Shown here: piece after piece, positions 1-61,985 of the stretch | Layout: every line of letters begins with the position of its first letter | Position numbering within the stretch: position 1 is the stretch's first letter | Origin: Bispira polyomma | Lineage: Eukaryota | DNA: 64,000 nt | Direction of reading: 5' to 3' | NCBI GenBank assembly: GCA_965649765.1 | Contig: OZ287748.1 | Location: forward strand, 86,800,001-86,864,000 | The notes under the pieces: model-generated | Told to the model about the DNA's origin: nothing | The model's database searches: none | What the model saw: the letters and a program-made list of their open reading frames with translations, nothing else | Position numbers and translations under genes: made by a program

Positions 1-320
1 AGACAGTGAGCACATGGTCATCACACATGGTAAGTCTGAATAATTAGCCTTCACATTTCTAGTCAACACACATGGTAAGTCTGAACACTTGACATTGACA
101 TTTCTAGTCATTTACCAGCACTATAAGACAGTGAGCACATGGTCAACACAATGGCAAGTCTGAACCCTGACCTTTCCAGTACTTCACCAGCTCTATCAGT
201 CAGTAAGCACATGGTCAACATACATAGTAAGGATGAACAATTGACCTTAACCTTTCTAGTCTGTCACCAGCAATATGCGACAGTGAGCACATGGTCAGCA
301 CACATAGTAGGTTTGACGAA
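1..320. repeat. diverged minisatellite, ~76-80 bp unit, in dachshund intron
   Basis: Recurring cagtgagcacatggtcaacacacatggtaagtctgaa...tttctagtc...accagc at about 5, 130, 200 and 281. Confidence 0.75.
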
Positions 321-692: not shown

Positions 693-887
693 GTGGCGAC
701 ACCCCCCATTTAGAGCCAGCATCTCTACCTGATAATGACACACTGGAAACCAGCTCGCAGCCTGACGACACTTCCGCTATTCCAGGAAGTGGCTCCATGG
801 TGGCTCTTCTCATCAATGTACAGGGCCTGCTGCGCATGGCGATAGAGTCTGCTAAACATAGAGAGCAGAAGTACAATGCTGAAAGAG
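693..887 (+). CDS. dac: dachshund exon (start of DD2)
   Basis: ttgtag|GT acceptor; open frame GDTPHLEP...LLINVQGLLRMA...AER; donor G|gtacct. Confidence 0.85.
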
Positions 888-3800
888 GTACCTATTGTTT
901 GCACATCAAATTAACTGTCAAAAGAGAAGTCAGTGTTGTTTACTCCATTTTATGGGGGGATGCTTCCAGTTTGTATCTTTTTTATTGTTATTATTCAAAG
1001 TGACTTTACATAAAGTTCGAAGCTGTATGCATCTCCAGTAAGGTGGATCTATTTGAGACAATTTCTTCTCTTCCATGACCCAAATGAACCCATTTTCCTC
1101 GATAAATGTGCTCTCATCATTATTTCAAGTTTACCTGCAACTGGAGAAGTGGGTAGTTTTCAATCAACTGTTTACCGTGGTACTTTGATAGTGAATAGGG
1201 CGATCAACACACTCGTCTCTATTTGTTATTGTAAATGCAATTAGGAAATGAATTAGTGAAATCGATGTTTCCGGAGGGGGAGGGGTGGGGTATCTTTAGT
1301 CTGTTTGCCCAAAACTTGGAGTTAGCAAACACCCAAGATGTCATCTGCCCTCTTCAGAGACTCCCGGTGAGCGTTGGGGGCCTTTCCTCATACAAAGCCG
1401 CCAATATTTAACTAAAAAGGAAAAAAAACCCTTGTTGCTTTTTTTGGTAGTAATATAGTGCATACAAACCATTTACCGAATGCATCAATTTCGTCACGGA
1501 AAAAAAATACCCCGGAATCATCTTTGTTTTTGTACTATAAGGTACATTTTAATGGAGATGAGTAATTTGCCTGGGGTGGAAATGGAAAGGGGAGGGGGGG
1601 GGGGGGGTTTGTCTTACTTCCAATAAACCTTGCTCTACCTAATTCTGTATTCCTTAGTAGATAAGTTGTCAAATAATATAAAAAAAGATACAGGGTTTGT
1701 TTGGAAACAATGCTGAACAAGAGAATAAGGTGTAAACAGTAACAGGTTAAGTGCCATTAATTACTTCAGCTAGGGGGGAGAGGGGGTATTTAAAGGGGGG
1801 GGGGAGTGGGGTGTATTGTTACTGCTTTAAATGGTTGAAGGGTCTCCTCTGGTACAACACTACTATAGTGGTGGTGAGAACCAGACCAGTTGCTGGCTTT
1901 GAAATGTAGTTAATAGAAATTTCTCTCTGCCACACACATGGGAATTTCAGCACTTCATCAAATAGAAGAAAATCAAATAAATATTTTTCCTAGAAAACCT
2001 TGTGTAAGAGAATTTGTACATTTTTGTGGCTCACCTCTTCCCCTCCTCCTTCTCCACATTTTCTACCTGGATTTTTTTTTATGTCTTGTTTGTTCAACTT
2101 GAATACATTAGAACCTATGGTACATATGAAACCTAGTAGACAGTGCCAGCAATAAAAGACAAAAAAACCAAATGAAGCCCAGGGTGGTGCAGAGGGAGAA
2201 ACTAGATATTTAATCAACTATCAAAGCACGTGTAACTGTAATTCAACTGTAAGAAAAATCATTAGTAAAAAAGGGGAACGTTACAACTGCAAGACGTTGT
2301 TTGTTTTAGATATTCCAAAACATCATAAGAATTACAGTTGGCAATAATGAAAAAGAGAAAAAAATTTTGAATAGAAAGAAGGTTGTATTTGAACTTGCAG
2401 TAGGTCTATAGTGTCAGTTACAATTAGTAGGCTTTATAACTAGTTCATATAGTTCATTTGGACAAACCCTGCAACAATTTGAGGACAAGTTCGCCAAGAG
2501 TAGTATAAAATAAAGGAAGTGAGTTTCTTAATGTCATGCAATACTATTTTCAAAAGAACAAATAACTTTACTACGTATAAACATGCATTACATGTTTTAT
2601 GAACTAGATACTACAATTATGCGAGAATACAAAGCTAACTTTAAGTATGAGACCTTTTAATCAAATGGAAGACATATCTTCAACTGGGGTCATCTTAAGC
2701 TATGGTTGTTTGTCTGAGGTTCAGTCAACAACATGATGTTGTGTCTTCATTTAGGGCTGTGGTAAGCTGAGTATTGAAGCTTTAGCCTTAGGCTAATTTA
2801 CCCCCAATAAATACGACTTTTCATCTCAATAATTTACACTGATCATTGCTTGGTCTATTTTCCTCACTGTAGTCCCCTAACGTGTAAACATTTTCCCTCA
2901 GTTCTTTGGAATAATGTAGACCGCCATGTAAGTGTATCCATTGCAACTTATGGATTTATCAACAGTGTACATTTGTTAAAATTTGTTCTGATCACAATAA
3001 ATACCGATCACAACATCTATTGACTTTTATTATTGGGCATTGGGCATTTGTAAGAATAAATATAATCTCTCCTATAAATATTAAAAACAACAGTGTTATT
3101 AAGATTAGAGTAAATATTTTCGATAACCTGTACATTTATAGCATTAACATGTTTTTCACTCTCATTTAAACAATTTTTACCAGTCATCTGACTTTCCTAA
3201 TTAAAATTGCAATAAAGCTGAAAATATGAATCTTTTGCTTAAAATTCTACATTATTACTAATATAACGATTTAAAACCATAAGACCATGTAACTAAGACA
3301 ACAAAAATATGTCTATAAAGTTTTTTTTTCTATTGTTTCTTGTTTACAGCTGAGTTAAGACGTGACATGGTACAGGAAAAAGAACGGCGGGAGAAGATGG
3401 AGCGGCACCTAGACGATACTCAGAAAACTATCGGTAAGTGTTTGGAATTTTCAATAACGTATAACTACCTGGGTCTCCTACCCCATGGCCCAGTGGTTAG
3501 CGAGTTAGTCTGGTGATTAAAAAGGCCGCCAGTTTGATTCCTAGTTGAGGGGGTTGGTTTGATGAGCAGAAGGTCCTGTTTCTTCTGACGCTTATGCATC
3601 AAGGTTGATTGGTGGGATAATATCCTTGGGCAAGATGATCAACTTGCAATTACGTGCTGATGACGACCGGGGCTATATGTTGTAGAACGAGAACCTCAGA
3701 GGATGATATATCAATAGAGAAATAGGGTAATAAAAGGATTATCAATAAAAGCATGACTTAACAAATACAGGGCCATATTCTCCCAAACATCTTAAGACCA

Positions 3801-5096
3801 CATCTCAACTGGGTCCAAAGCTCACATCTAGCCAGAGTAAAGATGGGTGAAATCTGACTGCATATTTCAATTAAGTGCGAAAAGCCCCATTATAATGAAT
3901 GGCTACAAGTATTGGTTATACAGGTACAGCTGAACAGATTTAAGTTAGTCTGAGTTGAGCTTTACATATTTGGACAACATATGAGCCTAGGATTCTACAT
4001 TTAAATTATCCTTGTTATATGCACAACCTTCAAAGAGTATACAATCTACATTTTGTGGTACTAATATATAATATAATTTTTTTTTATATATAATTTACAT
4101 GTCCTTGTGTTATTTTACGTAATTTATTTTCCAATCCTTTTTATTGCAGTTATCTTACAAAAGAAACTTAAGCGTGAAAGGAAACTGCTCCGCCGGATGC
4201 AAGACAGCATAGCCACATCCAGTCATATGACACACAGTCACATGAACCAAAGTCACATGACACAAAGTCACATGACTCCAGTATTCCCTAACCCCACACA
4301 GACTCCCATCTCAGCCCAGTGTGAGCGGTCATACAGCAATGGGATAGAGCACAGCCGTCACCCCAGTAGTGAAGTGTACCACAGAAATGAGAGTTTACAG
4401 GAGGAAGACGACAGTGAAGTACCTAGGAGTGTGGCTAGCGGGGAACTAATGAATGGTGGGTTTTGGGTTTGTTGCGCCTTAGAATTTGTTGTACAAAGAT
4501 TAAGTGCCATAAAAGTACGACTAGATTAGATTAGATTAGATTGGTGAGTGTACAGTTGATAATTCATCAACCAGTTGTAAATTTCAGAAGATCTCAGATT
4601 CCACTATATCAAGCTGATACTTTGGAATTAAAATATGATGACCTTCGAATCAAAGGTGGCCTTTGATGTCTATATAATTGGGTAAATTACCAAGGTCAAA
4701 TGTAGCTATGAGCCAATATAGCCATGGAAAAAGGCATATTTAGGTTTTACATTCATTAAGTCATTGAAGGCCAGCTTTATAGTTTTTTTTTAATGTTAAA
4801 ATTTAGTATAAACAAAGTTTAAAACACTTTTTATATTATATACCCCTTTCTAGAAGTGGAGATGTCACTTCATTACTTTTTTTTTATTCTTTGAGATATC
4901 ACATTACCACAAGGTTCTTAAAATTTAAGTACTAACACATATACATGTAGTTTTTTGATGATTTTTGGGAGTAATCTTGAAAACTGTATGTTGCCACCAG
5001 TTTGTACAGATAAGTATTCATTGTATTTGTTTTTAATGTGTAGGTCACTCATCACCTCTTCAAACAAGTTATCCAGATGATGCGGGTGATGATTGA
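693..5096 (+). CDS. dac: Dachshund homolog (Dac/DACH family), 3' part of gene; exons 693-887, 3350-3433, 4150-4455, 5044-5096; 5' exons lie upstream of the window
   Basis: The GT-AG spliced product reads ...GSMVALLINVQGLLRMAIESAKHREQKYNAER|AELRRDMVQEKERREKMERHLDDTQKTI|VILQKKLKRERKLLRRMQD..., matching the Dachshund DD2/Box-C motif (LLTNIQGLLKVA...ELK...QKRLKKEK). All introns are phase 1 and keep the frame; stop TGA 5094-5096. Confidence 0.88.
3350..3433 (+). CDS. dac: dachshund 84-nt exon (DD2 coiled coil)
   Basis: Polypyrimidine tract + tttacag acceptor; (A)ELRRDMVQEKERREKMERHLDDTQKTI; donor G|gtaagt. Confidence 0.9.
3476..3750 (+). mobile_element. tRNA-derived SINE (family A: tRNA head + CORE-like block)
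   Basis: A-box tggcccagtggttag, B-box gtttgattcc, then ggtgggataatatccttgggcaagatg shared with the copies at 26607-26925 and 55370-55600. Confidence 0.65.
3770..3987. mobile_element. degenerate Harbinger-type MITE
   Basis: Imperfect inverted ends gggccatattctcccaaacatcttaag / ctttacatatttggacaacatatgagcc; related ends occur at ~53312 and ~59330. Confidence 0.4.
4150..4455 (+). CDS. dac: dachshund exon (end of DD2 plus low-complexity tail)
   Basis: ttattgcag acceptor; (V)ILQKKLKRERKLLRRMQD...GELMN; donor G|gtgggt at 4456, with an alternative donor gtgagt at 4544. Confidence 0.85.
4459..4541 (+). mobile_element. 5'-truncated L2/CR1 LINE 3' tail with (TAGAT)n end
   Basis: Near-identical to the 3' end of the LINE at 60041-60113 (reverse strand): ttttgggtttgttg...tacaaagattaag(t/c)gc(c/t)ataa(a/c)agtac(g/a)actagattagatt. 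Flanked by the direct repeat TGGTG. Confidence 0.85.
5044..5096 (+). CDS. dac: dachshund terminal coding exon
   Basis: T-rich tract then gtgtag acceptor; (G)HSSPLQTSYPDDAGDD*; phase fits the 4455 donor. Confidence 0.7.
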
Positions 5097-7580
5097 AGCT
5101 GATTCCACTCACAATGAGGCGCTGTGACCCTGTCTACTCTTATAGATCTTGAATATAGGTGTTATATTTAGTAAATCTATTGTGGCGTTACTGTTGTTCC
5201 TGGACAGTGTTGGGAGATGTTGGCTTCTTGGGCATAGAAAGAAAGAAACAGTGACTGAAAGTGTTTCATATTGTAATATACACATAAACTTTAATAAAGG
5301 ATTAAAGTCTGGAAAAATATGTTTTGTGGAGTTTTAAGTATGGCGAATTATTACAGAGATCACCCCAAATGCACATAATCTTCTATATTAAATGTTGCAG
5401 GCTTTTAATTATGCCCAACACTTGTAAAGAGATCCCTCCTATCCAAGGATCTTGTATTGTAGAGAGTGCTCAGTTCTTCTCTATTTCTGTGTTTTATGTC
5501 ATAATTATATCTGAAGCTAAGAGGGGGTGGTTTCCCAAAGCCTCCAGTCCTTAAGAGAACCGGATCAATGACATACTTAAAGTTTCTGTGTAAAGACATT
5601 TCAATAAAGAACCTTTTCAGTATCAAATGACCTAATGCACACAAAAATAAGTTGCAAGAATATGTCAAATAAATTGTAGTATATTCAGTATATCAAACAA
5701 TTCTTGAGATCAATCGCCATATATGAGTATATTTTGTTGCTGTTGGGTTCTAAATGCCAAGAGATATATAATGACATCAATGACAGTACTGTTACCACCA
5801 TCAGTGGCATGCTGATGTATGTCCTCAAAAGGTAGAATATATCAAATACATGATGGCTGTAAATTGTTAAACCCTAAGTTTGTAAACCCTGGGAACCTTA
5901 ACAAGACTAAAAGTCCTTCATTTTGGCAAACATTGGTGGTAAAACAATGAATCTTGTATAGAGAGAGAGAAACTGCCTCTTTAAAACACTGTAGAGAGGA
6001 AGTTTACACTATAGTAAACTGACTGCTCTGGAAGGTTGTTTGTCAGGTAAGCTGTCAATTTGCTGACACCATTGGTGTTTGTGAGAATTGATGTATTACA
6101 TGAATATATAATGCATGGGAACTAGCAGTAAATAAGACTTCTGCAGCAAATATTTGTCATTTGGGATGTGTAAATTCCCCCCCCCCCCAAAAAAAAAAAA
6201 AAAAACAAGAAAAAAAAGTGGACTCACTTTAAGTATTTATGTGTAATTTTTAAAAAACTTGTAGTTATTTATAGAAAGAGAAGCATATATTTGCTACTTT
6301 GCTTCTCTTTCCTTGGTATATAATTAATTTTTTTGTCCTATTAAGGAGAGTAGTGTTTTTCTTTCATTTGACATTAATTTAGTAAAATGACTTGATGACC
6401 CACTTACTCTAACTTTAAGGTAGTCATAGAATATGGATTCTTGAGAAACCCTTGGCTCTTGTCTATAGAACAGCAGTTGTTCTGATCAAATACACTGGAA
6501 GGGTGTAAGTAAATAGAAATATGGGACTAAACACTTGTTTCCTTTGCTTTGGCTGTTATGTCTTGTTGGTTTGGTCTAATTCAAAATTGCTACATTTATT
6601 GACAGAAATAGATGTTGAATAGGTGTTTAAGTTTTTCTCACTGCTAATTAATGAACTCTTCTCTTTTTAGCGACATTGTGTGACAAAGAACAAGTAAAAG
6701 GTGTAAATGAATGAACATTTCTGTGAGGCCTAATAAAAAACCGGATTGATTTACCTAGAAATCATTCTGTTGTGGATGAATTAAATATTTGCCACCGATG
6801 GACCGGTTCCCAAATTTAGGAAACATAATTGAAGAGTCTGTTTATATTTAGAACTATAAAACCATGATGACTGAAATAGATTCTCTTCACAAAAAAAAAT
6901 AGTTTGATGAATGCATATTTCACAGTTAAATATTATCCCAAACCCATCTTTGTGTGTGTAAATTCTTAGCTATATCGGAAAAAAGGCTTCAAGTTGACCT
7001 CATTCTGTTTTAATCTTTCTTATACCAATTTTGAATATAACTTGTGAATAGTAGAATTACTGTGGAATTGGTAGATTCATTGTATCACTATTGTACTATT
7101 TTTTGTCAATACATCCTTTCATCATTAATAAGCTATGGGGAATATTAGCATATTCCACTACTTATTTTTCATTTCTCATTACTGATTATAGTAGCAATAT
7201 ATTATTTATTTTAATGGTATCTGTAATGTGTGGTTTTTCATTCTTACTCAAATCAGCAAAGGGTTTCAAAAAGCTAATCTGATACCTTGAAGCATGGAGC
7301 TGATTGATTTAGTAAGACAAAAATGGCTGTTGTTAAATACTCATGTGTATCATAATGATCTTTGGGATTAGTTTTAGTTCCTATAGTGTGAACTATATAC
7401 TAATAATGTTTTATTAATTTTTTAATTAGAGCTATTATGGTGAAATGATAGCCAATTGTACAATGTGTATTTATTGGCACTATGTGACTTTAGTATTATA
7501 TATAATATGTATACATATTAATGCATCTTATATTTCTATGTGTATATCATGTAAACAATTGTTAACTTTACATTAAGTTA

Positions 7581-7586
7581 AATAAA
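7581..7586 (+). terminator. candidate polyadenylation signal of dachshund (3'UTR ~5097-7605)
   Basis: AATAAA follows an AU-rich region with TGTA motifs and precedes a T-rich tract (tttttttctttgtc). Earlier AATAAA sites exist near 5600-5670. Confidence 0.45.
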
Positions 7587-8324
7587 TCGTTAGTAAACTT
7601 ACCATCCTGATTTTTTTCTTTGTCTTAAACATACCATTAAAATACTTAAACGTACAGTTCTGGTATAATATTTACGAGCTATATTGTGGATATATATAAT
7701 TTATACATGCATTCATAGATTCCTGGTCACAACACAATGTTCACTGATATATAATACTGAGGAATGCCTTTTGGTTTAGCATTAGGATCTACTGCTTTGA
7801 TGAGGTTTGTAGATGAGACGTAAAATCAAACACTTTATTTGAGTTTTAGGTCACTTTCAACATCTTGGGTTATATCATGAACGCCAGATTTAATGCCTAT
7901 GGCAAGTTACATGGTAAATTTTTCCACCTTAATAACAAATGGGATTCCAACCCACATTGTTGAGAGGCCAGTGATTATGAAGCTAATGCTTGGAAAAAAA
8001 CCAATACACAACCGCAGCCTCAAATTTATTATGAAGAAAACCAGTTGACTATATTAATCTATAATTGAACTGTAAAGTACCTGACATACTTTCTAAAATG
8101 ATGAAAGCATTGAAATTCTCCCCCCCTGTTATCACAGTTGATAGTGGAAAATAGAACCCTTCTTACCACAAGGCCACCTTGTCTCTTCCTGCCACATTGA
8201 AAGTACATTTATTTAGCTTTATTGCCCATTGCATCATATTTATATTATTGTTACTATTAAAAATTGGTATTGATATAACAACTATAGATATAACACATGG
8301 TTTATATTACAGGTATTGGTATGG

Positions 8325-26108: not shown

Positions 26109-27432
26109 AATCTAATCTAATTTAATTCTTATAGCTCTTATCTCTGTGCTAGCAGATTCTAAGGTGCAGGCATCATTGAGAACAGTGGCAGTGTGGATGA
26201 AAAAATATTGCATATTTCATAGACTTCCAAGTTGTACAAGGCTAATTTTCAACTATACAAAACATATATAGAGAAAGAAAGCATACTTTAGAAATTGAAA
26301 AAAAAGCATTTATATTTGGATAGATGGGGGCTGAAATAAGTAGGTAATCCAGAATGTAGAAATTTGTATAAAATTGTTGCCGTTTTGAAATCAACACGAT
26401 ATTTTATCGGGAGCCAGTGCAGTGACTTGAGTACAGGAGTAATGTGAGAAAATTTAGAATTTTTGGCCACAATTCGAGCCAGTGAGTGTTGAACATTCTG
26501 AAGGTGTCTGATTTCACTATGAGATAAGGAACGGAACAGAGAGTTGCAGTAATTAAGCCTACTGATGACCAAGGCATTGGCAACAGTGATTGCAGTGGAT
26601 TTGGTGAAAAAAAAAAAAATAGTACATTTGTTATAGCGCATTTATAGAACACAGGGTCCTTTTAAATGTGCTTTCTCATGGGCAGCCACTATGGGCGTCG
26701 AGGTGCTTGAGGATGACCATTTATCAACGTCCCCAAGGATCTTTAATCTGCCACGCGAGATATTACTCAGCGACAGAGGACCGCCATTCTAAGTGGTCAT
26801 CTGAGTCACTAGGAAAACTTGTGTTCACATCTTGCCTAAGGATGCTATCCCACCAAATGAAACTAGCGGCCGGAACTTGAACCAGGGACCTTCTGATCAT
26901 CAGACCAACACCCTAACCAATAGGGTTAATGTTGAATCCACCTGAAATCACGGAGGCCAACAAAACATAATCTACACACGGATGCAACATGGTTGGAGAA
27001 GGAGAATTTGGAGTTCGAGCAACACGCTCAGGTTGCATACTTTGTCAACTGGAAAAAGCCTGTTGCCAAGAATATCAACTGGGAAACAGCTGGACAGTTT
27101 TTTGAGTTGCAACATGAAGCTAAATAAAATAAACTTAGTCTTATCAGGGTTGAGCTTGAGTTTATTTGCTGACATCCAGTGTTGTACATCGACAAGGCAG
27201 TTCTGTAAGGAGGTGAATGCTGTCTGGGCAGAATCAGGTGTAAGGTGGTTTTCAGTTGGGTATCATCAGCAACGAAGTGAAAACTTATGTTTTTGTATGC
27301 AGCAATGATCTTGCTGAGGGGAGTGGTGTACATGGAAAACAATATAGGATCCAGGACTGAACCCTGGGGAACAACAAATTTTAACCATGCAGGGTCGGAT
27401 AGGACGATGCCAATTTTGACCGATTGGAATTT
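26109..27432 (-). mobile_element. decayed L2/CR1 LINE (RT fragment), interrupted by a SINE
   Basis: ORF pieces VPQGSVLDPILFSMYT...ADDTQL, NKLKLNPDKT, SRLNYCNSL, HITPVLKSLHWLPIKYRVDFK; (atcta)n tail remnant at ~26109-26125. Confidence 0.9.
26607..26925 (-). mobile_element. tRNA-derived SINE (family A head + CORE-like + Deu/Nin-like block + L2-like tail), nested in the LINE
   Basis: Reverse strand: tggttagggtgttggtctgatgatcagaaggtccctggttcaagttcc head; ccttaggcaagatg; tail gcgctataacaaatgtactattt resembles the local L2 tail. Confidence 0.8.
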
Positions 27433-32450: not shown

Positions 32451-33688
32451 GCTATGTTAGTGTGTTTTGTGATTTAGTCTGTATTATGGTGTAGTTACGC
32501 CCATCCATATATGCAAACCGCTCATACCGTTTATCTTCGTGACCGTTTATCTTCATGACCACCCGTGTACATTTCATTCCATATTTTTAAATATGTTTTA
32601 AAATATCAGACGTTTTTCACCAAAACATCGCTACGGGAAATGGCCATATCTGTTTCTGTTTTTTCCAATTGGTAAATACTAAACCTCGCGAGTACCTTAT
32701 CTTGTTATGTCAGTGGGATTTACGATTGGCTTACTGATGTTGTTGCCGTTTGGAATATGTTTAGCATCAATAAAGCGCGTTAAAAATGTATAATAAAAAT
32801 AATTATCCCTCACAAGCTTCTCTTCTGAGATAATCTATCGAAGTTTTTGGTGTCTGCTATCTTTACACACATAGAAATTCAGTTATTTGTGTGTCACAGA
32901 AAGTGCTGTGTGCTTCCTTCATAAAATTTTCGGAACCTGATTTCTAACAATTTGCTTACAATTCAGAGACCCGACTTCTACCCAAAAAATTAGGATTGAG
33001 CACCCAAATCTCAAGCACTTGAGAATATTAATAATATTTTTTCATTATTAAAGATTAAATTGTCTATGCTATATCATGGCTAAGATTTTATTTCAAGAAA
33101 GTAGTTGAAAACATTGTCCCTTATATTTTGTATATATTAGAATAGACGCTGATTTGTACAATAAGCTGTAGTTTGGTATTTTTTGCTAGAAAGGGTATCT
33201 TTTGAGAATGTTTGCCCGCCAAATCAAAACCAAGTTACAAACTAAGTTTGTGTTAATGTAAAATCTTTTAAGTTGTACAAACGTTTGTGTTACATATTTA
33301 AACTGTTTGCTTTATCTGAAGAAATTGTTATACAAACTCAAAGACTGCTCTAATTTACACTGACCATCGCAAATGTAAAAAAAAGAAAATGAAATCCATT
33401 ATCTCAAGGCATTATTTGAAAATATATAAAATGTAGACAGTTGTCCTGATAAAATCAGATTCCTAAGGGTTAGTTAAAAGAAAAACTTAAATTTGGTACT
33501 ATCTTAGAATATATGTGTAAACTGTGGTACAACAGCAGTACAAAAAAAAGAATGCTTCATATGTTTTTCAACTGCACATGTCAGTTGGACAAAAATATAT
33601 ATACTCCATGCAAAAAGTCATTACTTACTGTGTAGTAAATTACTAAGTGTATTGTTGTTCTCATCAGGGATACAAGCAGAGAGAAATA

Positions 33689-33808
33689 ATGCCCACTGTT
33701 GAAGATATGGATGGTGCTGGAAGTAGTAGTGGTACCAATGAGCCTAATGAGGGCACATCGTCAGAAGTACCCCCACAACAACCACAGGGGGCTGTGGCAA
33801 AAATAGTT
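33689..33808 (+). CDS. TMEM33: TMEM33 coding exon 1 (exon acceptor at 33668)
   Basis: MPTVEDMDG...GAVAKIV; donor gtaagt at 33809; upstream acceptor tctcatcag. Confidence 0.8.
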
Positions 33809-36800
33809 GTAAGTTCAACCACCATGTGTAAGGGAAAGTTCTATATATCTAATCTAATCAATTTCGTGAAGGCACTTAATCTTCTGATTACAGTTGAACC
33901 CTGTTAAGTCAAACCTCAAGGTACCAGGAATAATACTTCTGCTTAAGCAGGATTTCCACTTAACAAGGTGAATTCAAAAGGAAAAGGCCTTCATGGGACT
34001 TCAAATTTATCTCCACATAACAGGGAAAATGACTTAACAGAGGTCTACTTAAAGGTGTTCGACTGTATTATATATGTTCTGACAGAATTTTGAATTCTAT
34101 CTGCAGATATAATATTTATAGTAAGCTAAATTATCAGGATTTTAATTTCTGTAACAACACGTATATAACTATAACATTGTGGTTATTCAATAGTTCATCA
34201 AATTGTTTTCAATTTATTCCTGGTCGCTAGATGTTCATATCTTTGTGTTAAAAATATCTTGCATTTAACTGGGTTTTTTTTTAAACACTAATTTACTAAA
34301 ACTGCTACAGTTAGGTTTATTCATTTATTTCTGTCATTAGAATATGAATATATTTATAACGATGAATATAAACAGAACAAGAGTTCCTAGCCAATATGGG
34401 CTTATCAGTGATAATTTAACAAATACTTGAAATACAGATTTAGCATGTAAACTATGTCAAGAGATTATAATGACAGTATAAAGAGCCATTTAAGGTGTGA
34501 AACTTTTTTAAAAGCATAAACAAAAATGTCATTAAACAGTCCTTTAAGTATCAATGTAAAATTGTTAAATCTAGGAAAGTAGCTTGTAAAAATTTACATT
34601 CAATTACAAATTTAATTGTAATTAGCTGGATTTCTCTTTCTACGTTTTATTATTTTTATACATTTAAACCTAGTAATAATGGCATAACTTGTTGTATTTA
34701 GAATCACATGAGCAGGAACAAAGTAGAAGCAGCTCTTTGGGCAACTCGACTGTTCACAGTTGGCTGTGTGTTTAATTTCTTCATTCCTATATGGGCGTAA
34801 GTAGTTAATTAGTTATTTATCAGTAAAATAGATCTGTCTTGCTTTTTTGTTTCTAAGATCAAAGATAACTTATAAAAAAGCTGGTTAAAATAAATCTGTA
34901 TAGTACATCAGCACCATTCATAATGTTCTTGTTGGTTAGTATGTATTCTGTTATCTTGTGAGTGTCTGTATTAATAAGCATCAAATACTTGCAAATTTAT
35001 GATTTTTTTTCTCACTTTCAGACTTGATGAAAAAAAATTGATCAGTACATATCATTTATGTTCTAAAGGGGAAAGGACCCAATGTAATTTAATAACAGGT
35101 TTTATTTCCTGGTTTGATAACTTTATTGATTTATCATTACACTTAACCCTGCAATGTAAGGGCACAAGTGCATCAGAAAGATATTATTTATGTCTTAAAG
35201 GGTATAGGACCCAATGTAATTTAATAACAGGTCTTATTTCCTGGTTTGATAACTTTATTCATTTAGCATTACACATAACCATGCAACGTAGGGACACAAG
35301 TGCTCCATTTTATGTTATTTTAGTCTAAGCATTTATATACTGTAGAATGGGTTGTTATCAGATGTGTAGTTGTGTGTTCGCATCTTGCCCAACCAAGTGT
35401 TGTATCCCTGAAAAGTCACTGTGGTTTTAACAAGAGTTAAACCAGGGACCCTCTGTTGACATTGTCAACTGCCTTAGCACTAGGCCCTGTGAGACCACAT
35501 GATTTTATGGGATACATATTACTGTACTACATGTATGTTCTATGTAGATTCGGTATCCAGAGTCTTATCTTTCTAATTATCAGCTAAGGGTTTCAGTGGT
35601 GTAGTGGTTACACACTCCCCTCCAATATTGGCAGTCTGCTTTTGATGAATGATCGGTTGTCAAAAGCAACATGGTACTAAAAATAAATCAAAAGTTACTC
35701 TTACAGAAGTCACTAAAACAAGTGCAAATTGTCATTAAATTGAGAGTTAAGTGGCATAGTAAAACTAACATTAGCCAGCTTGTTATCGCATATGTATACT
35801 AGCTTTAAGGTATAACCTGTAACATACCAGGAATTTTACTATGCTTTTGGGGTATATGGAAACAAAGGCAAAGCCAGATTATTTCCACAATTTCCAAGAG
35901 TGGTAAAAATTCCCCACATTTTTTTTAACCAATCAGAATCAGTGACACAAGCTTGTGATGTTAGAATGGAATATAGTAATCATTATTGTAGTGACCGTGG
36001 TGGTCTTGTGGTTAGAAGCGTTCCCTTCCCAATCACTGGTCTCTATCCAATGTGGGTTCGAATCCCATTCGTTCCTTCATGTGGAAAAGTTTTTCATGTA
36101 CTTTTCATAGGTCGGTGGGTTACACATTGGCTTCAGCACTGGTTTCTTCCACCCTTAAATCTGGCCATCACAATATGACCTAAGCTGTTGAAAGTGATGA
36201 AAACCCAAGTAAATTCAAATGATCATTTGTTGAAAGTGACGTCAAACTATTTCAGCTACCCAGCCAATGCTTACCACAAGGCTCTACTGAGTAATGCTGC
36301 CACCAGTGCACTACGTCTTCACCAGAGACTACCACAGTTCCAGTTCTCACGGGAGTTTCTTGGCAGGATGTTTTTAGAAGACAGTGCTCACTACCTGTTC
36401 TATTGCATTATATTTCTGACTGGATACCCACTCACAAGTATCCTTTTTTACAATCAATTTGAAATAGTTCTATTTTATGTGGATTTGTAACTAGGGTTCT
36501 TAATGTCTTGTATCATTGATACCTAGATGGTTCTTGCTTTTCACGGTCAGTACAGAGTCTTTGGATAAGTTGTGTGCACCATCTATTTATTTTAGTCCTA
36601 ACAAAGATGGCGTATACAAGGACAAAAGCTAAAGTAAAGCAGATTTACATTTGTAATATTTGGAATACTTTGTATTAGATATTGTTGGATTAGTCAATCG
36701 TCACTAATAGTGTTGGACCATCGGTCGTGATAGCCCAATTTATCAACGGTCCAAGCCACAACTTAAAAATTTAACTAGTCAGGATTTTTGGCATATAGCA

Positions 36801-60040: not shown

Positions 60041-61985
60041 TCCAATCTAATCTAATCTATCTAATCTAGTTGTACTGTTATAGCGCTTAATCTTTGTACA
60101 ACAAACCCAAAACATTAATCAAAAATCAAAAATAGTAGACGGATGGAAGTCGTAACCAGGAAGACCACCAGAAATGGTTGCGACGGCTAAGGTGGAAAAG
60201 CCTGTTAAGAAAGATAGGCCTTCAGCTTACTCCTGAAAGAGGAGAAAGTTTGAGCCAGGTGAACATGATCAGGTAGGCTGTTCCAAATGAGGGGGCCATC
60301 ATGTGCTAGGCACTGATTAAACTGAACTTTAGATTTGAGGATGCGAGGGTCCAAAGTGGGAATGTTAAGGTATAATTTATCAGGGTTACTGTGCCTTGTT
60401 CTGACTGAGAATATATATTTGGATAGATGGGGGCTGAAATAAGTTGGTAATCCAAACAGAATAAACTCAGTCTTCTCAGGGTTCAGCTTGAGTTTATTTG
60501 CTGCCATCCAGTGTTGTACATCAACAAGACAATTCTGTAAGGAAGTGAAAGCTGCCTGGGCAGAGTCCGGTGCAAGGTGGATGTACAGTTGGGTATCATC
60601 AGCATAGAAGTGAAAGTTTATGTTTTTGTATGCAGCAATAATCTTGCTAAGTGGAGTGGTGTACATGGAAAACAAAATAGGACCCAGGACTGAACCTTGG
60701 GGAACACCAAATTTTAACCATGTTGGGTCGGATAAGATATTGCCAATTTTGACCGATTGGAATCTATCAGACAAATATGCCGTGAACCACTTAAGTGCCA
60801 TACCGCTGATACCGAACCAAGACCATAGGCACTCAAGAAGAACTTTGTGATCAATAGTATCAAAGACTGCTGACAGATCCAGCATTACTAAGGCAGTATG
60901 CATACCTTTGGATAAAGATGTATGAAGATAATTTTTGATGCATAGGACTGCAGTCTCTGTAGAATGACCACTTTTGTACGCTGACTGATACTTATTGGAT
61001 AGATTGCTGACGTCAAGATGCTGTTTGATCTGTAAGGCAACCACGCGTTCTACCAACTTAGAGATATAGTAAAAGCCTGGAACAGGACGGTAATTTTCAA
61101 GACAGCCTTTGGAAGAGAAGGTTTTTTTATTAAAGGAGTGACAATGGCCTTTTTAAAATCATTCGGAAAGACGCCATTTACCAACGAGAGGTTGATAAGT
61201 TTTGTGATTGAGGGCAATAAAATGTCAATACATTCCTTAACAAGGAATGTGGGCATCTGACCTAATAGGCAGGATTTTACGGGTGATGCCAGTATAATTT
61301 TCCTGACTTCATCAACAGTTACTGTGGAGAAACAGTTAAAGACGGTTGGTGGAGTTGTAGATAAAGGGGCATTTGGGGCAGCTAATTCTGGTAATTTTAT
61401 CAGTAAAAAAAGTACTAAAAATGTTTGCCAGTGATTTGCTATTGCTAATTTCGGGTAGTATAGTCTGTTTTTTACGGTGGAGGATGCTGTTAAATTTCTG
61501 CCAAAGTTTCTTAGGGTCACCCTCGCTTTGTGAGATGATGTTGGCATAGTAGGCATGTTTGGAGTCATTTATAGTGTTGTTGCACCAGGTGATGCATTGG
61601 TGTAGTCTTGATCTATTTCTGGTGCCATGTTCGTTCAGCTTGTCGGCGCAGCATCTTCATTTCACGATATGTACTGGTGATTCACTCTGGAGCAGGCTTC
61701 TTCAATGTCTTTGATTTACATGGCACATGGCATTCTATAAGAGACTGCAGGTCAGTGCAGTACTATGTGTATAGGTCAGCAACATTATCAGCAGGAGACT
61801 TGACGAAGGCCGTATCTGCCAACTCTCGTCTAAGGTCAGACATATTGATTTTTTGAAATTGCCGAAAAGTGATTTGTGTGACATCAAAAGATGGCGGGGA
61901 GGGAGCATCAATTTGGCAGGATATTAAAAAATGATCACTGATGCAACCAATGTTTTTTTATGCTTCTGATACTATTGAGAGGATG
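60041..61985 (-). mobile_element. 5'-truncated L2/CR1-clade LINE (APE C-terminus + RT), frameshifted and internally deleted
   Basis: ISDHFL endonuclease motif at ~61925-61945; KAIVTPLIKKP, QSAYKSGHSTETA, LDLSAVFDTIDH, GVPQGSVLGP, YADDTQLY; 3' end (TAGAT)n. Confidence 0.95.

What the first reader, a model, noticed from the sequence alone, without database searches (positions are those of the whole stretch)
4454..4549. LINE tail inserted exactly at a dachshund 5' splice site, duplicating the donor and offering an alternative C-terminus
Seen: an ~83-bp L2/CR1 3' end (4459-4541, same family as the LINE at 60041) is flanked by the direct repeat TGGTG (4454-4458 and 4542-4546), which spans the exon/intron boundary. 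Removing the insert restores AATG|GTGAGTGTAC, a consensus donor. The insertion left a proximal donor G|GTGGGT (4456) built from the duplicated bases plus the first LINE bases, which keeps the ancestral ending (...MNGHSSPLQTSYPDDAGDD*). The original, closer-to-consensus G|GTGAGT now sits at 4544. Inference: using the distal donor would exonise 88 nt and end the protein ...MNGGFWVCCALEFVVQRLSAIKVRLD* (TAG 4527-4529). That stop is only 14 nt before the last junction, so it should escape NMD under the 50-55 nt rule. This may be a recent or polymorphic exonisation in a developmental regulator.
Basis: partly seen in the sequence, partly recalled or inferred. Interest (0 to 1): 0.8.

Follow-up and report, generated by a model that had tools for sequence, protein, structure and literature searches.

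The report
LINE fragment duplicates dachshund splice donor
A short piece of a young jumping gene landed exactly on the last splice signal of a marine invertebrate's (probably an annelid worm's) dachshund gene and left two usable copies of that signal; the event is real but of a known kind, and no RNA was available to show whether it changes the protein's end.

Summary
An 82-nt 5'-truncated 3' end of a young LINE (L2-like; at least 4,240 exact tail matches in the 1.035-Gb genome) plus one extra G sits between two TGGTG copies (4454-4458, 4542-4546) spanning the last coding donor of dachshund. Two other animals carry the empty site (ATG|GTGAGT, ATG|GTAAGA), and one has the orthologous last exon, so the ancestral donor and ending are confirmed. 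The family makes 4-8-nt target-site duplications and shows no preference for donors (39 tails next to a donor motif, 47-48 for controls): a chance hit that survived. Which donor is used is untested; no RNA run was offered. The downstream donor pairs better with U1 (-11.1 vs -8.4 kcal/mol), but the spacer looks silencer-like, and the upstream donor is a rare rescue (3.6% of truncation points do as well). My odds: upstream dominant 0.5, both used 0.33, downstream dominant 0.17. Three DNA runs (at most two samples, perhaps the assembly's own) show no empty allele, so polymorphism is unsupported. Known kind (canine Merle, introners). The scan had not noted this site; it noted donor duplications elsewhere in this genome.

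The parts
693..887 (+). dachshund coding exon, start of the C-terminal coiled-coil (DD2) region
   Evidence: 89% amino-acid identity to ortholog L072; boundaries
3350..3433 (+). dachshund coding exon, DD2 region
   Evidence: 27/27 residues identical in L072
4150..4455 (+). penultimate coding exon (306 nt, phase 1-1), ends ...ELMN-G
   Evidence: 77% and 66% identity to L072 and L073; single copy in the genome
4454..4458 (+). 5' copy of the target-site duplication TGGTG, spanning the exon/intron boundary
4456..4461 (+). upstream (intron-distal) donor ATG|GTGGGT, rebuilt from the duplicated GTG, one extra G and the first two LINE bases; keeps the ancestral ending
   Evidence: U1 pairing -8.4 kcal/mol in fixed register; position equals the donor of both orthologs
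4459..4459 (+). extra G (family consensus C); puts G at +5 and T at +6 of the upstream donor
   Evidence: without it -4.4, with C -4.8 kcal/mol
4460..4541 (+). 82-nt 3' end of a 5'-truncated L2-like LINE, sense to the gene; differs from consensus at 4505 and 4508
4522..4542 (+). (TAGAT)4 tail of the element, directly before the downstream donor
4527..4529 (+). in-frame TAG ending the 23-residue LINE-derived tail if the insert is exonised or the intron is retained
4542..4546 (+). 3' copy of the target-site duplication TGGTG
4544..4549 (+). downstream (intron-proximal) donor TTG|GTGAGT, the original intronic half
   Evidence: U1 pairing -11.1 kcal/mol, equal to the reconstructed empty site; GTGAGT in L072
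5044..5096 (+). last coding exon, 16 residues plus TGA
   Evidence: acceptor, frame and stop conserved in L072, 8 of 16 residues identical
60041..61656 (-). longer, more diverged copy of the same LINE family, with reverse transcriptase remains
   Evidence: RVT_1 E 3.5e-31; 88.6-94% to copy L041; left end, right end approximate

Best explanation
A young L2-like LINE inserted by chance, by target-primed reverse transcription, at the last coding donor of dachshund. Reverse transcription stopped after 82 nt; repair duplicated TGGTG and added one G. SHOWN: the insertion, its duplication, the ancestral donor and ending, two donor-like sites 88 nt apart. INFERRED: the allele survived because the 5' junction rebuilt a workable donor (G|GTGGGT) at the original position; most transcripts use it, the LINE piece leaves with the intron, and the protein is unchanged. 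The U-rich, GGG- and UAG-containing spacer helps the upstream donor and dampens the downstream one; exonised transcripts are a minority.
For: Empty site and last exon in orthologs. Short duplications are the family's habit. No donor targeting. Only 3.6% of 1,515 possible truncation points of an intact copy rebuild a donor this good, as expected of a survivor. The upstream donor pairs with U1 about as well as the natural donor of L073 (-8.0) and better than one other donor of this gene (-5.7). Spacer holds 5 TAG, 2 GGG, 3 TTTG; silencers and intronic elements between competing donors suppress the intron-proximal one in human reporters (PMC1877881; PMC5585400). No empty allele in the DNA runs fits a tolerated allele.
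Against: The downstream donor is stronger (-11.1 vs -8.4) and intron-proximal, which from my own knowledge of duplicated-donor experiments tends to win. Silencer evidence is from human cells and motif counts only. The survivor argument weakens if the 16-residue ancestral tail is dispensable (50% conserved; DD2 is intact either way). The two samples may be one animal and the source of the assembly. No RNA seen.
Confidence: 0.5

Rival explanations
1. Both donors are used at appreciable levels, giving two Dachshund isoforms with intact DD1 and DD2: the ancestral acidic 16-residue tail and a LINE-derived hydrophobic 23-residue tail.
For: Two donors with at least 6 Watson-Crick pairs to U1, the two best GT sites in 4160-5030; stop 14 nt before the junction; U1 5' end is standard in this genome. 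Mirror case at an acceptor: Merle (PMC7349775).
Against: No RNA evidence. The new tail is hydrophobic (mean hydropathy +0.93 vs -1.44); from my own knowledge such tails from non-coding translation are often degraded, so an mRNA isoform need not give a protein.
Confidence: 0.33
2. The stronger, intron-proximal donor at 4544 dominates; the species (or this genotype) has in effect swapped the Dachshund C-terminal tail for LINE-derived sequence and the old last exon is now 3' UTR.
For: Downstream donor equals the ancestral one in U1 pairing; the ancestral tail is the least conserved coding part tested.
Against: Does not explain why the 5' junction rebuilt a good donor (3.6% event); silencer-like spacer; a 394-nt exon ending in AT-rich repeat sequence.
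Confidence: 0.15
3. Assembly artefact, or a chance 5-nt repeat at a site that never was a donor.
For: A 5-nt match alone occurs in about 13% of mismatched pairs under a loose search.
Against: Contigs of three runs cross both junctions with no other letters; orthologs show the donor at this position.
Confidence: 0.02

Closest known systems
Canine Merle (SINEC_Cf at the PMEL intron 10/exon 11 boundary; PMC7349775)
   Same: Non-LTR retroposon inserted at an exon/intron boundary, with a target-site duplication there, leaving two competing splice sites, one of which exonises element sequence; a simple-repeat tail lies next to a splice site.
   Different: Merle is at an acceptor, antisense, 15-bp duplication, with proven splicing change, polymorphism and phenotype. 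Here: donor, sense, 5-bp duplication, LINE 3' end, stop in the exonised part, nothing shown at RNA level.
Introners that recruit a splice site from the target-site duplication (PMC9860276)
   Same: A splice site is made wholly or partly from duplicated target bases, so the element can be removed from the mRNA.
   Different: Introners are mostly DNA transposon-like, create new introns in exons and do it family-wide. This insert only lengthens an existing intron by 88 nt, and its family shows no donor bias.
L2-clade LINEs (UnaL2, zebrafish CR1-2_DR/ZfL2, SalL2; PMC2653535)
   Same: Reverse transcriptase ORF ending about 135 nt before a short tandem-repeat tail, variable 5' truncation, short duplications, hairpin before the tail.
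   Different: Tail unit TAGAT; clade not tested by phylogeny; endonuclease and ORF1 not seen.
Exonisation of transposed elements through alternative 5' splice sites (Alu, MIR, L2)
   Same: An exon is extended into element sequence by a downstream donor.
   Different: The donor is not a cryptic site of the element but the gene's own displaced donor.

Membership tests
Dachshund (DACH) gene | N-terminal DD1/Dachbox-N (Ski_Sno_DHD) domain of dachshund type in the same gene | tested here: met
   PF02437 at C1:86785566-86785886, + strand, 14 kb before the window; named hits are dachshund proteins; separate ski/sno- and skor-like loci exist elsewhere. Linkage to the window's exons is by position, strand and synteny with L072, not by RNA.
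Dachshund (DACH) gene | C-terminal DD2 coiled-coil region | tested here: inconclusive
   Exons 693-887, 3350-3433 and the start of 4150-4455 are highly conserved and look like DD2 from my own knowledge, but Pfam gives no hit.
Non-LTR retrotransposon (LINE) insertion | 3' end shared with reverse-transcriptase-coding copies; variable 5' truncation; repeat tail | tested here: met
   97% to L041, which has an open 460-residue RVT_1 frame; truncations from 116 nt to over 1.5 kb.
Non-LTR retrotransposon (LINE) insertion | Target-site duplication and an empty ancestral site | tested here: met
L2 clade | Reverse transcriptase groups with L2 rather than CR1 in a phylogeny | not testable with these tools
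   No labelled reference set; ORF2 C-terminal motifs look L2-like from memory only.
L2 clade | 3' stem-loop followed by a short tandem repeat | tested here: inconclusive
   A hairpin is predicted before the tail but is no better than shuffles (z 0.36 and -0.01); the repeat tail is present.
L2 clade | APE endonuclease upstream of the reverse transcriptase | not tested
   Full-length copies could not be fetched.
Transposon exonisation | Element sequence present in spliced mRNA | not testable with these tools
   No RNA run offered.
Introner | Family-wide creation or targeting of splice sites | tested here: not met
   Tail followed by GTRAGT 39 times, controls 48 and 47; donor before short copies 3 vs 3.
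Polymorphic insertion | Empty allele in the same species | tested here: inconclusive
   None seen in three DNA runs of at most two samples; contigs cannot prove absence and 7 joints were not shown.

The most novel reading that the evidence does not exclude
The downstream donor is used enough to give this species a stable Dachshund isoform ending in LINE-derived residues, and the number of TAGAT units before that donor, which may vary by slippage, tunes the isoform ratio, a donor-side counterpart of Merle in a developmental regulator.
Probability: 0.12. Interest if true: 0.6.

Novelty: new member of a known kind. Interest (0 to 1): 0.3.

Why it matters
It is a clean natural experiment: one exon, two donors 88 nt apart, the weaker upstream, the ancestral state known from relatives. 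One RT-PCR would show how a lophotrochozoan spliceosome weighs donor strength, position and a silencer-like spacer. If exonisation is real, it is an early step in giving a conserved transcription cofactor a new tail. If not, it shows how a LINE can hit a splice site of a developmental gene and do no harm. It opens no new mechanism.

Tried and rejected
Donor targeting by the family: rejected. The apparent run of GG after tails was selection by my query; the unbiased set has GG in 2 of 30. Short retroposon (SINE) with a fixed 5' end: rejected, the relatives run on upstream into a reverse transcriptase frame. A further coding exon downstream: the conserved blocks at 6040-7616 have frameshifting gaps and no open frames. 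RNA structure hiding one donor: no stable signal (z -0.01). RNA runs: none offered. Naming the species: failed; relatives come from unnamed environmental assemblies. Four papers on donor choice that I tried by id were not held. Spliced models were searched exon by exon by reference; the joined search was left out. The big protein search was not used.

Full report
Observation. The sequence is as described. TGGTG stands at 4454-4458 and 4542-4546, with 83 nt between; taking out the insert and one copy gives AATG|GTGAGTGTAC. The exon runs 4150-4455 (306 nt; one search counted from 4151 and is one short). Joined to the acceptor at 5043/5044 it ends MNG plus a 16-residue acidic tail; read on to 4543 it ends MNG plus 23 LINE-derived residues, with TAG at 4527-4529, 14 nt before the junction.

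The gene. A Ski_Sno_DHD exon of dachshund type lies 14 kb before the window on the same strand. Its closest named relatives are annelid (Ridgeia, Lamellibrachia, Capitella) and mollusc proteins, and the named full hits are dachshund. The genome has 1.035 Gb; every match fell on 14 large contigs. So the host is a lophotrochozoan, probably a marine annelid (inference); I could not name it.

Ancestral state. A search with the exon alone found two relatives. In L072 (77% identity) the exon ends ATG|GTGAGT, exactly the predicted empty site; in L073 it ends ATG|GTAAGA. L072 also has the last exon with the same acceptor, phase and stop (8 of 16 residues identical) and a similar start of the 3' UTR, and no trace of the LINE in 20 kb. 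These are other species, not alleles.

The element. The insert is the extreme 3' end of a high-copy family: at least 4,240 exact matches to a 29-nt tail pattern. Copies extend upstream by 116 nt to more than 1.5 kb, and L041 and L068 keep an open 460-residue frame with RVT_1. Long copies are 96.5% alike at the median, and the insert differs from the consensus at 2 of 82 places: a young insertion, which I cannot date in years. The match begins at 4460; 4459 is a G where the family has C or T. The copy at 60041 belongs to the family but is more diverged and lacks 17 nt. L2 membership rests on remembered ORF2 motifs and the repeat tail (compare PMC2653535); it was not tested by a tree. Short duplications that overlap the tail by 1-4 nt are typical: 13 of 27 resolved copies have 5 nt or more, against 13% of mismatched pairs.

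Targeted or chance? Genome-wide, the tail is followed within 5 nt by GTRAGT 39 times, by a permuted motif 48 times and by the antisense motif 47 times. Donor motifs shortly before very short copies: 3 sense, 3 antisense; in 300-nt flanks of 27 copies 5 sense, 7 antisense upstream. There is no donor bias; this also gives no support, for this family, to the scan's note s1-585883 on L2 tails behind donors, though that note's family and distances are unknown to me. With thousands of insertions and on the order of 100,000 donors (my estimate), a few hits on donors are expected.

Which donor? The genome's U1 5' end is standard. In fixed register the upstream donor pairs at -8.4 kcal/mol, the downstream one at -11.1, the same as the reconstructed empty site; natural donors of this gene and its orthologs span -5.7 to -11.2. 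This is a crude score, not a splice model trained on this animal. In the usual terms 4544 is the intron-proximal donor; strength and position both favour it (position: own knowledge). Against that, the spacer is U-rich and has two GGG right behind the upstream donor and five TAG, mostly in the tail next to the downstream donor. In human reporters silencers and intronic elements between competing donors suppress the intron-proximal site, and hnRNP A1 favours the distal one (PMC1877881; PMC5585400). And the upstream donor owes +5 G and +6 T to the extra base: without it the score is -4.4, with the consensus C -4.8, and only 3.6% of truncation points of an intact copy would do as well. That looks like a survivor's junction, which suggests the upstream donor matters. 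I give upstream-dominant 0.5, both 0.33, downstream-dominant 0.15-0.17.

Consequences if exonised. DD1 and the coiled-coil region stay whole; a weakly conserved acidic tail (hydropathy -1.44) is replaced by a hydrophobic one (+0.93; best 12-residue window 2.0). Such tails often destabilise proteins (own knowledge). Escape from NMD is plausible, since the stop is 14 nt from the junction and the 3' UTR grows by only 67 nt, but neither the 50-55-nt rule in this animal nor the absence of a later intron was tested. AATAAA/ATTAAA signals follow from about 5290.

Polymorphism and RNA. Three runs hold the region, none on record as RNA, from one study and at most two samples, possibly the assembly's source. 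In each, one contig crosses the 5' junction (3605-4486) and one the 3' junction (4518-5800) with no other letters, and no empty-site joint is listed; 7 joints were not shown and contigs drop rare variants. So no empty allele was seen, which is not proof of fixation.

Comparison and verdict. It works like Merle, where a SINE with a 15-bp duplication at an intron/exon boundary leaves competing acceptors (PMC7349775), and like introners that take a splice site from their duplication (PMC9860276). It is not an introner (no family-wide bias) and not yet an exonisation (no RNA). I found no paper on a donor-side LINE case in my few searches, which is weak evidence of absence. The same gene has another exon end and donor amplified in tandem at window 1-320, single in L072, so extra donors seem to be tolerated here. 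A real, tidy, single-locus event of a known kind: interest 0.3.

Noticed in passing
window 1-320: The 3' end of another dachshund exon and its donor are repeated about five times in tandem (GT sites near 30, 75, 227; degenerate ones near 155 and 308); L072 has a single copy. Same pattern as scan notes s1-621228 and s1-585860.
   Followed up: partly
window 1795-2319, 6040-6160, 6468-6815, 7316-7616: Non-coding blocks 72-78% identical to the ortholog locus L072, with frameshifting gaps; candidate enhancers or 3' UTR elements of dachshund.
   Followed up: partly
window 3482-3684: Another high-copy interspersed repeat, SINE-like, begins about 50 nt behind the donor at 3433.
   Followed up: no
window 33647-36487: Next gene is TMEM33/Pom33 (PF03661, E 4e-24 for 36179-36487).
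   Followed up: partly
G000:C1:22583115-22786648 and beyond: Tandem array of about 200 U1 snRNA 5' ends spaced about 1.4-3.8 kb apart.
   Followed up: no
L032 and L033 (G000:C3:78.95 and 79.00 Mb); L034, L036 (C2): Two neighbouring ski/sno-like genes and two skor-like genes besides one dachshund; names from memory of the motifs.
   Followed up: no
window 26305-27430, minus strand: A further, older fragment of the same LINE family, 87-90% to L041.
   Followed up: no
L041:1-1380 and L068: Copies with an uninterrupted reverse transcriptase frame over the 1.4 kb seen; the family may be recently active.
   Followed up: partly
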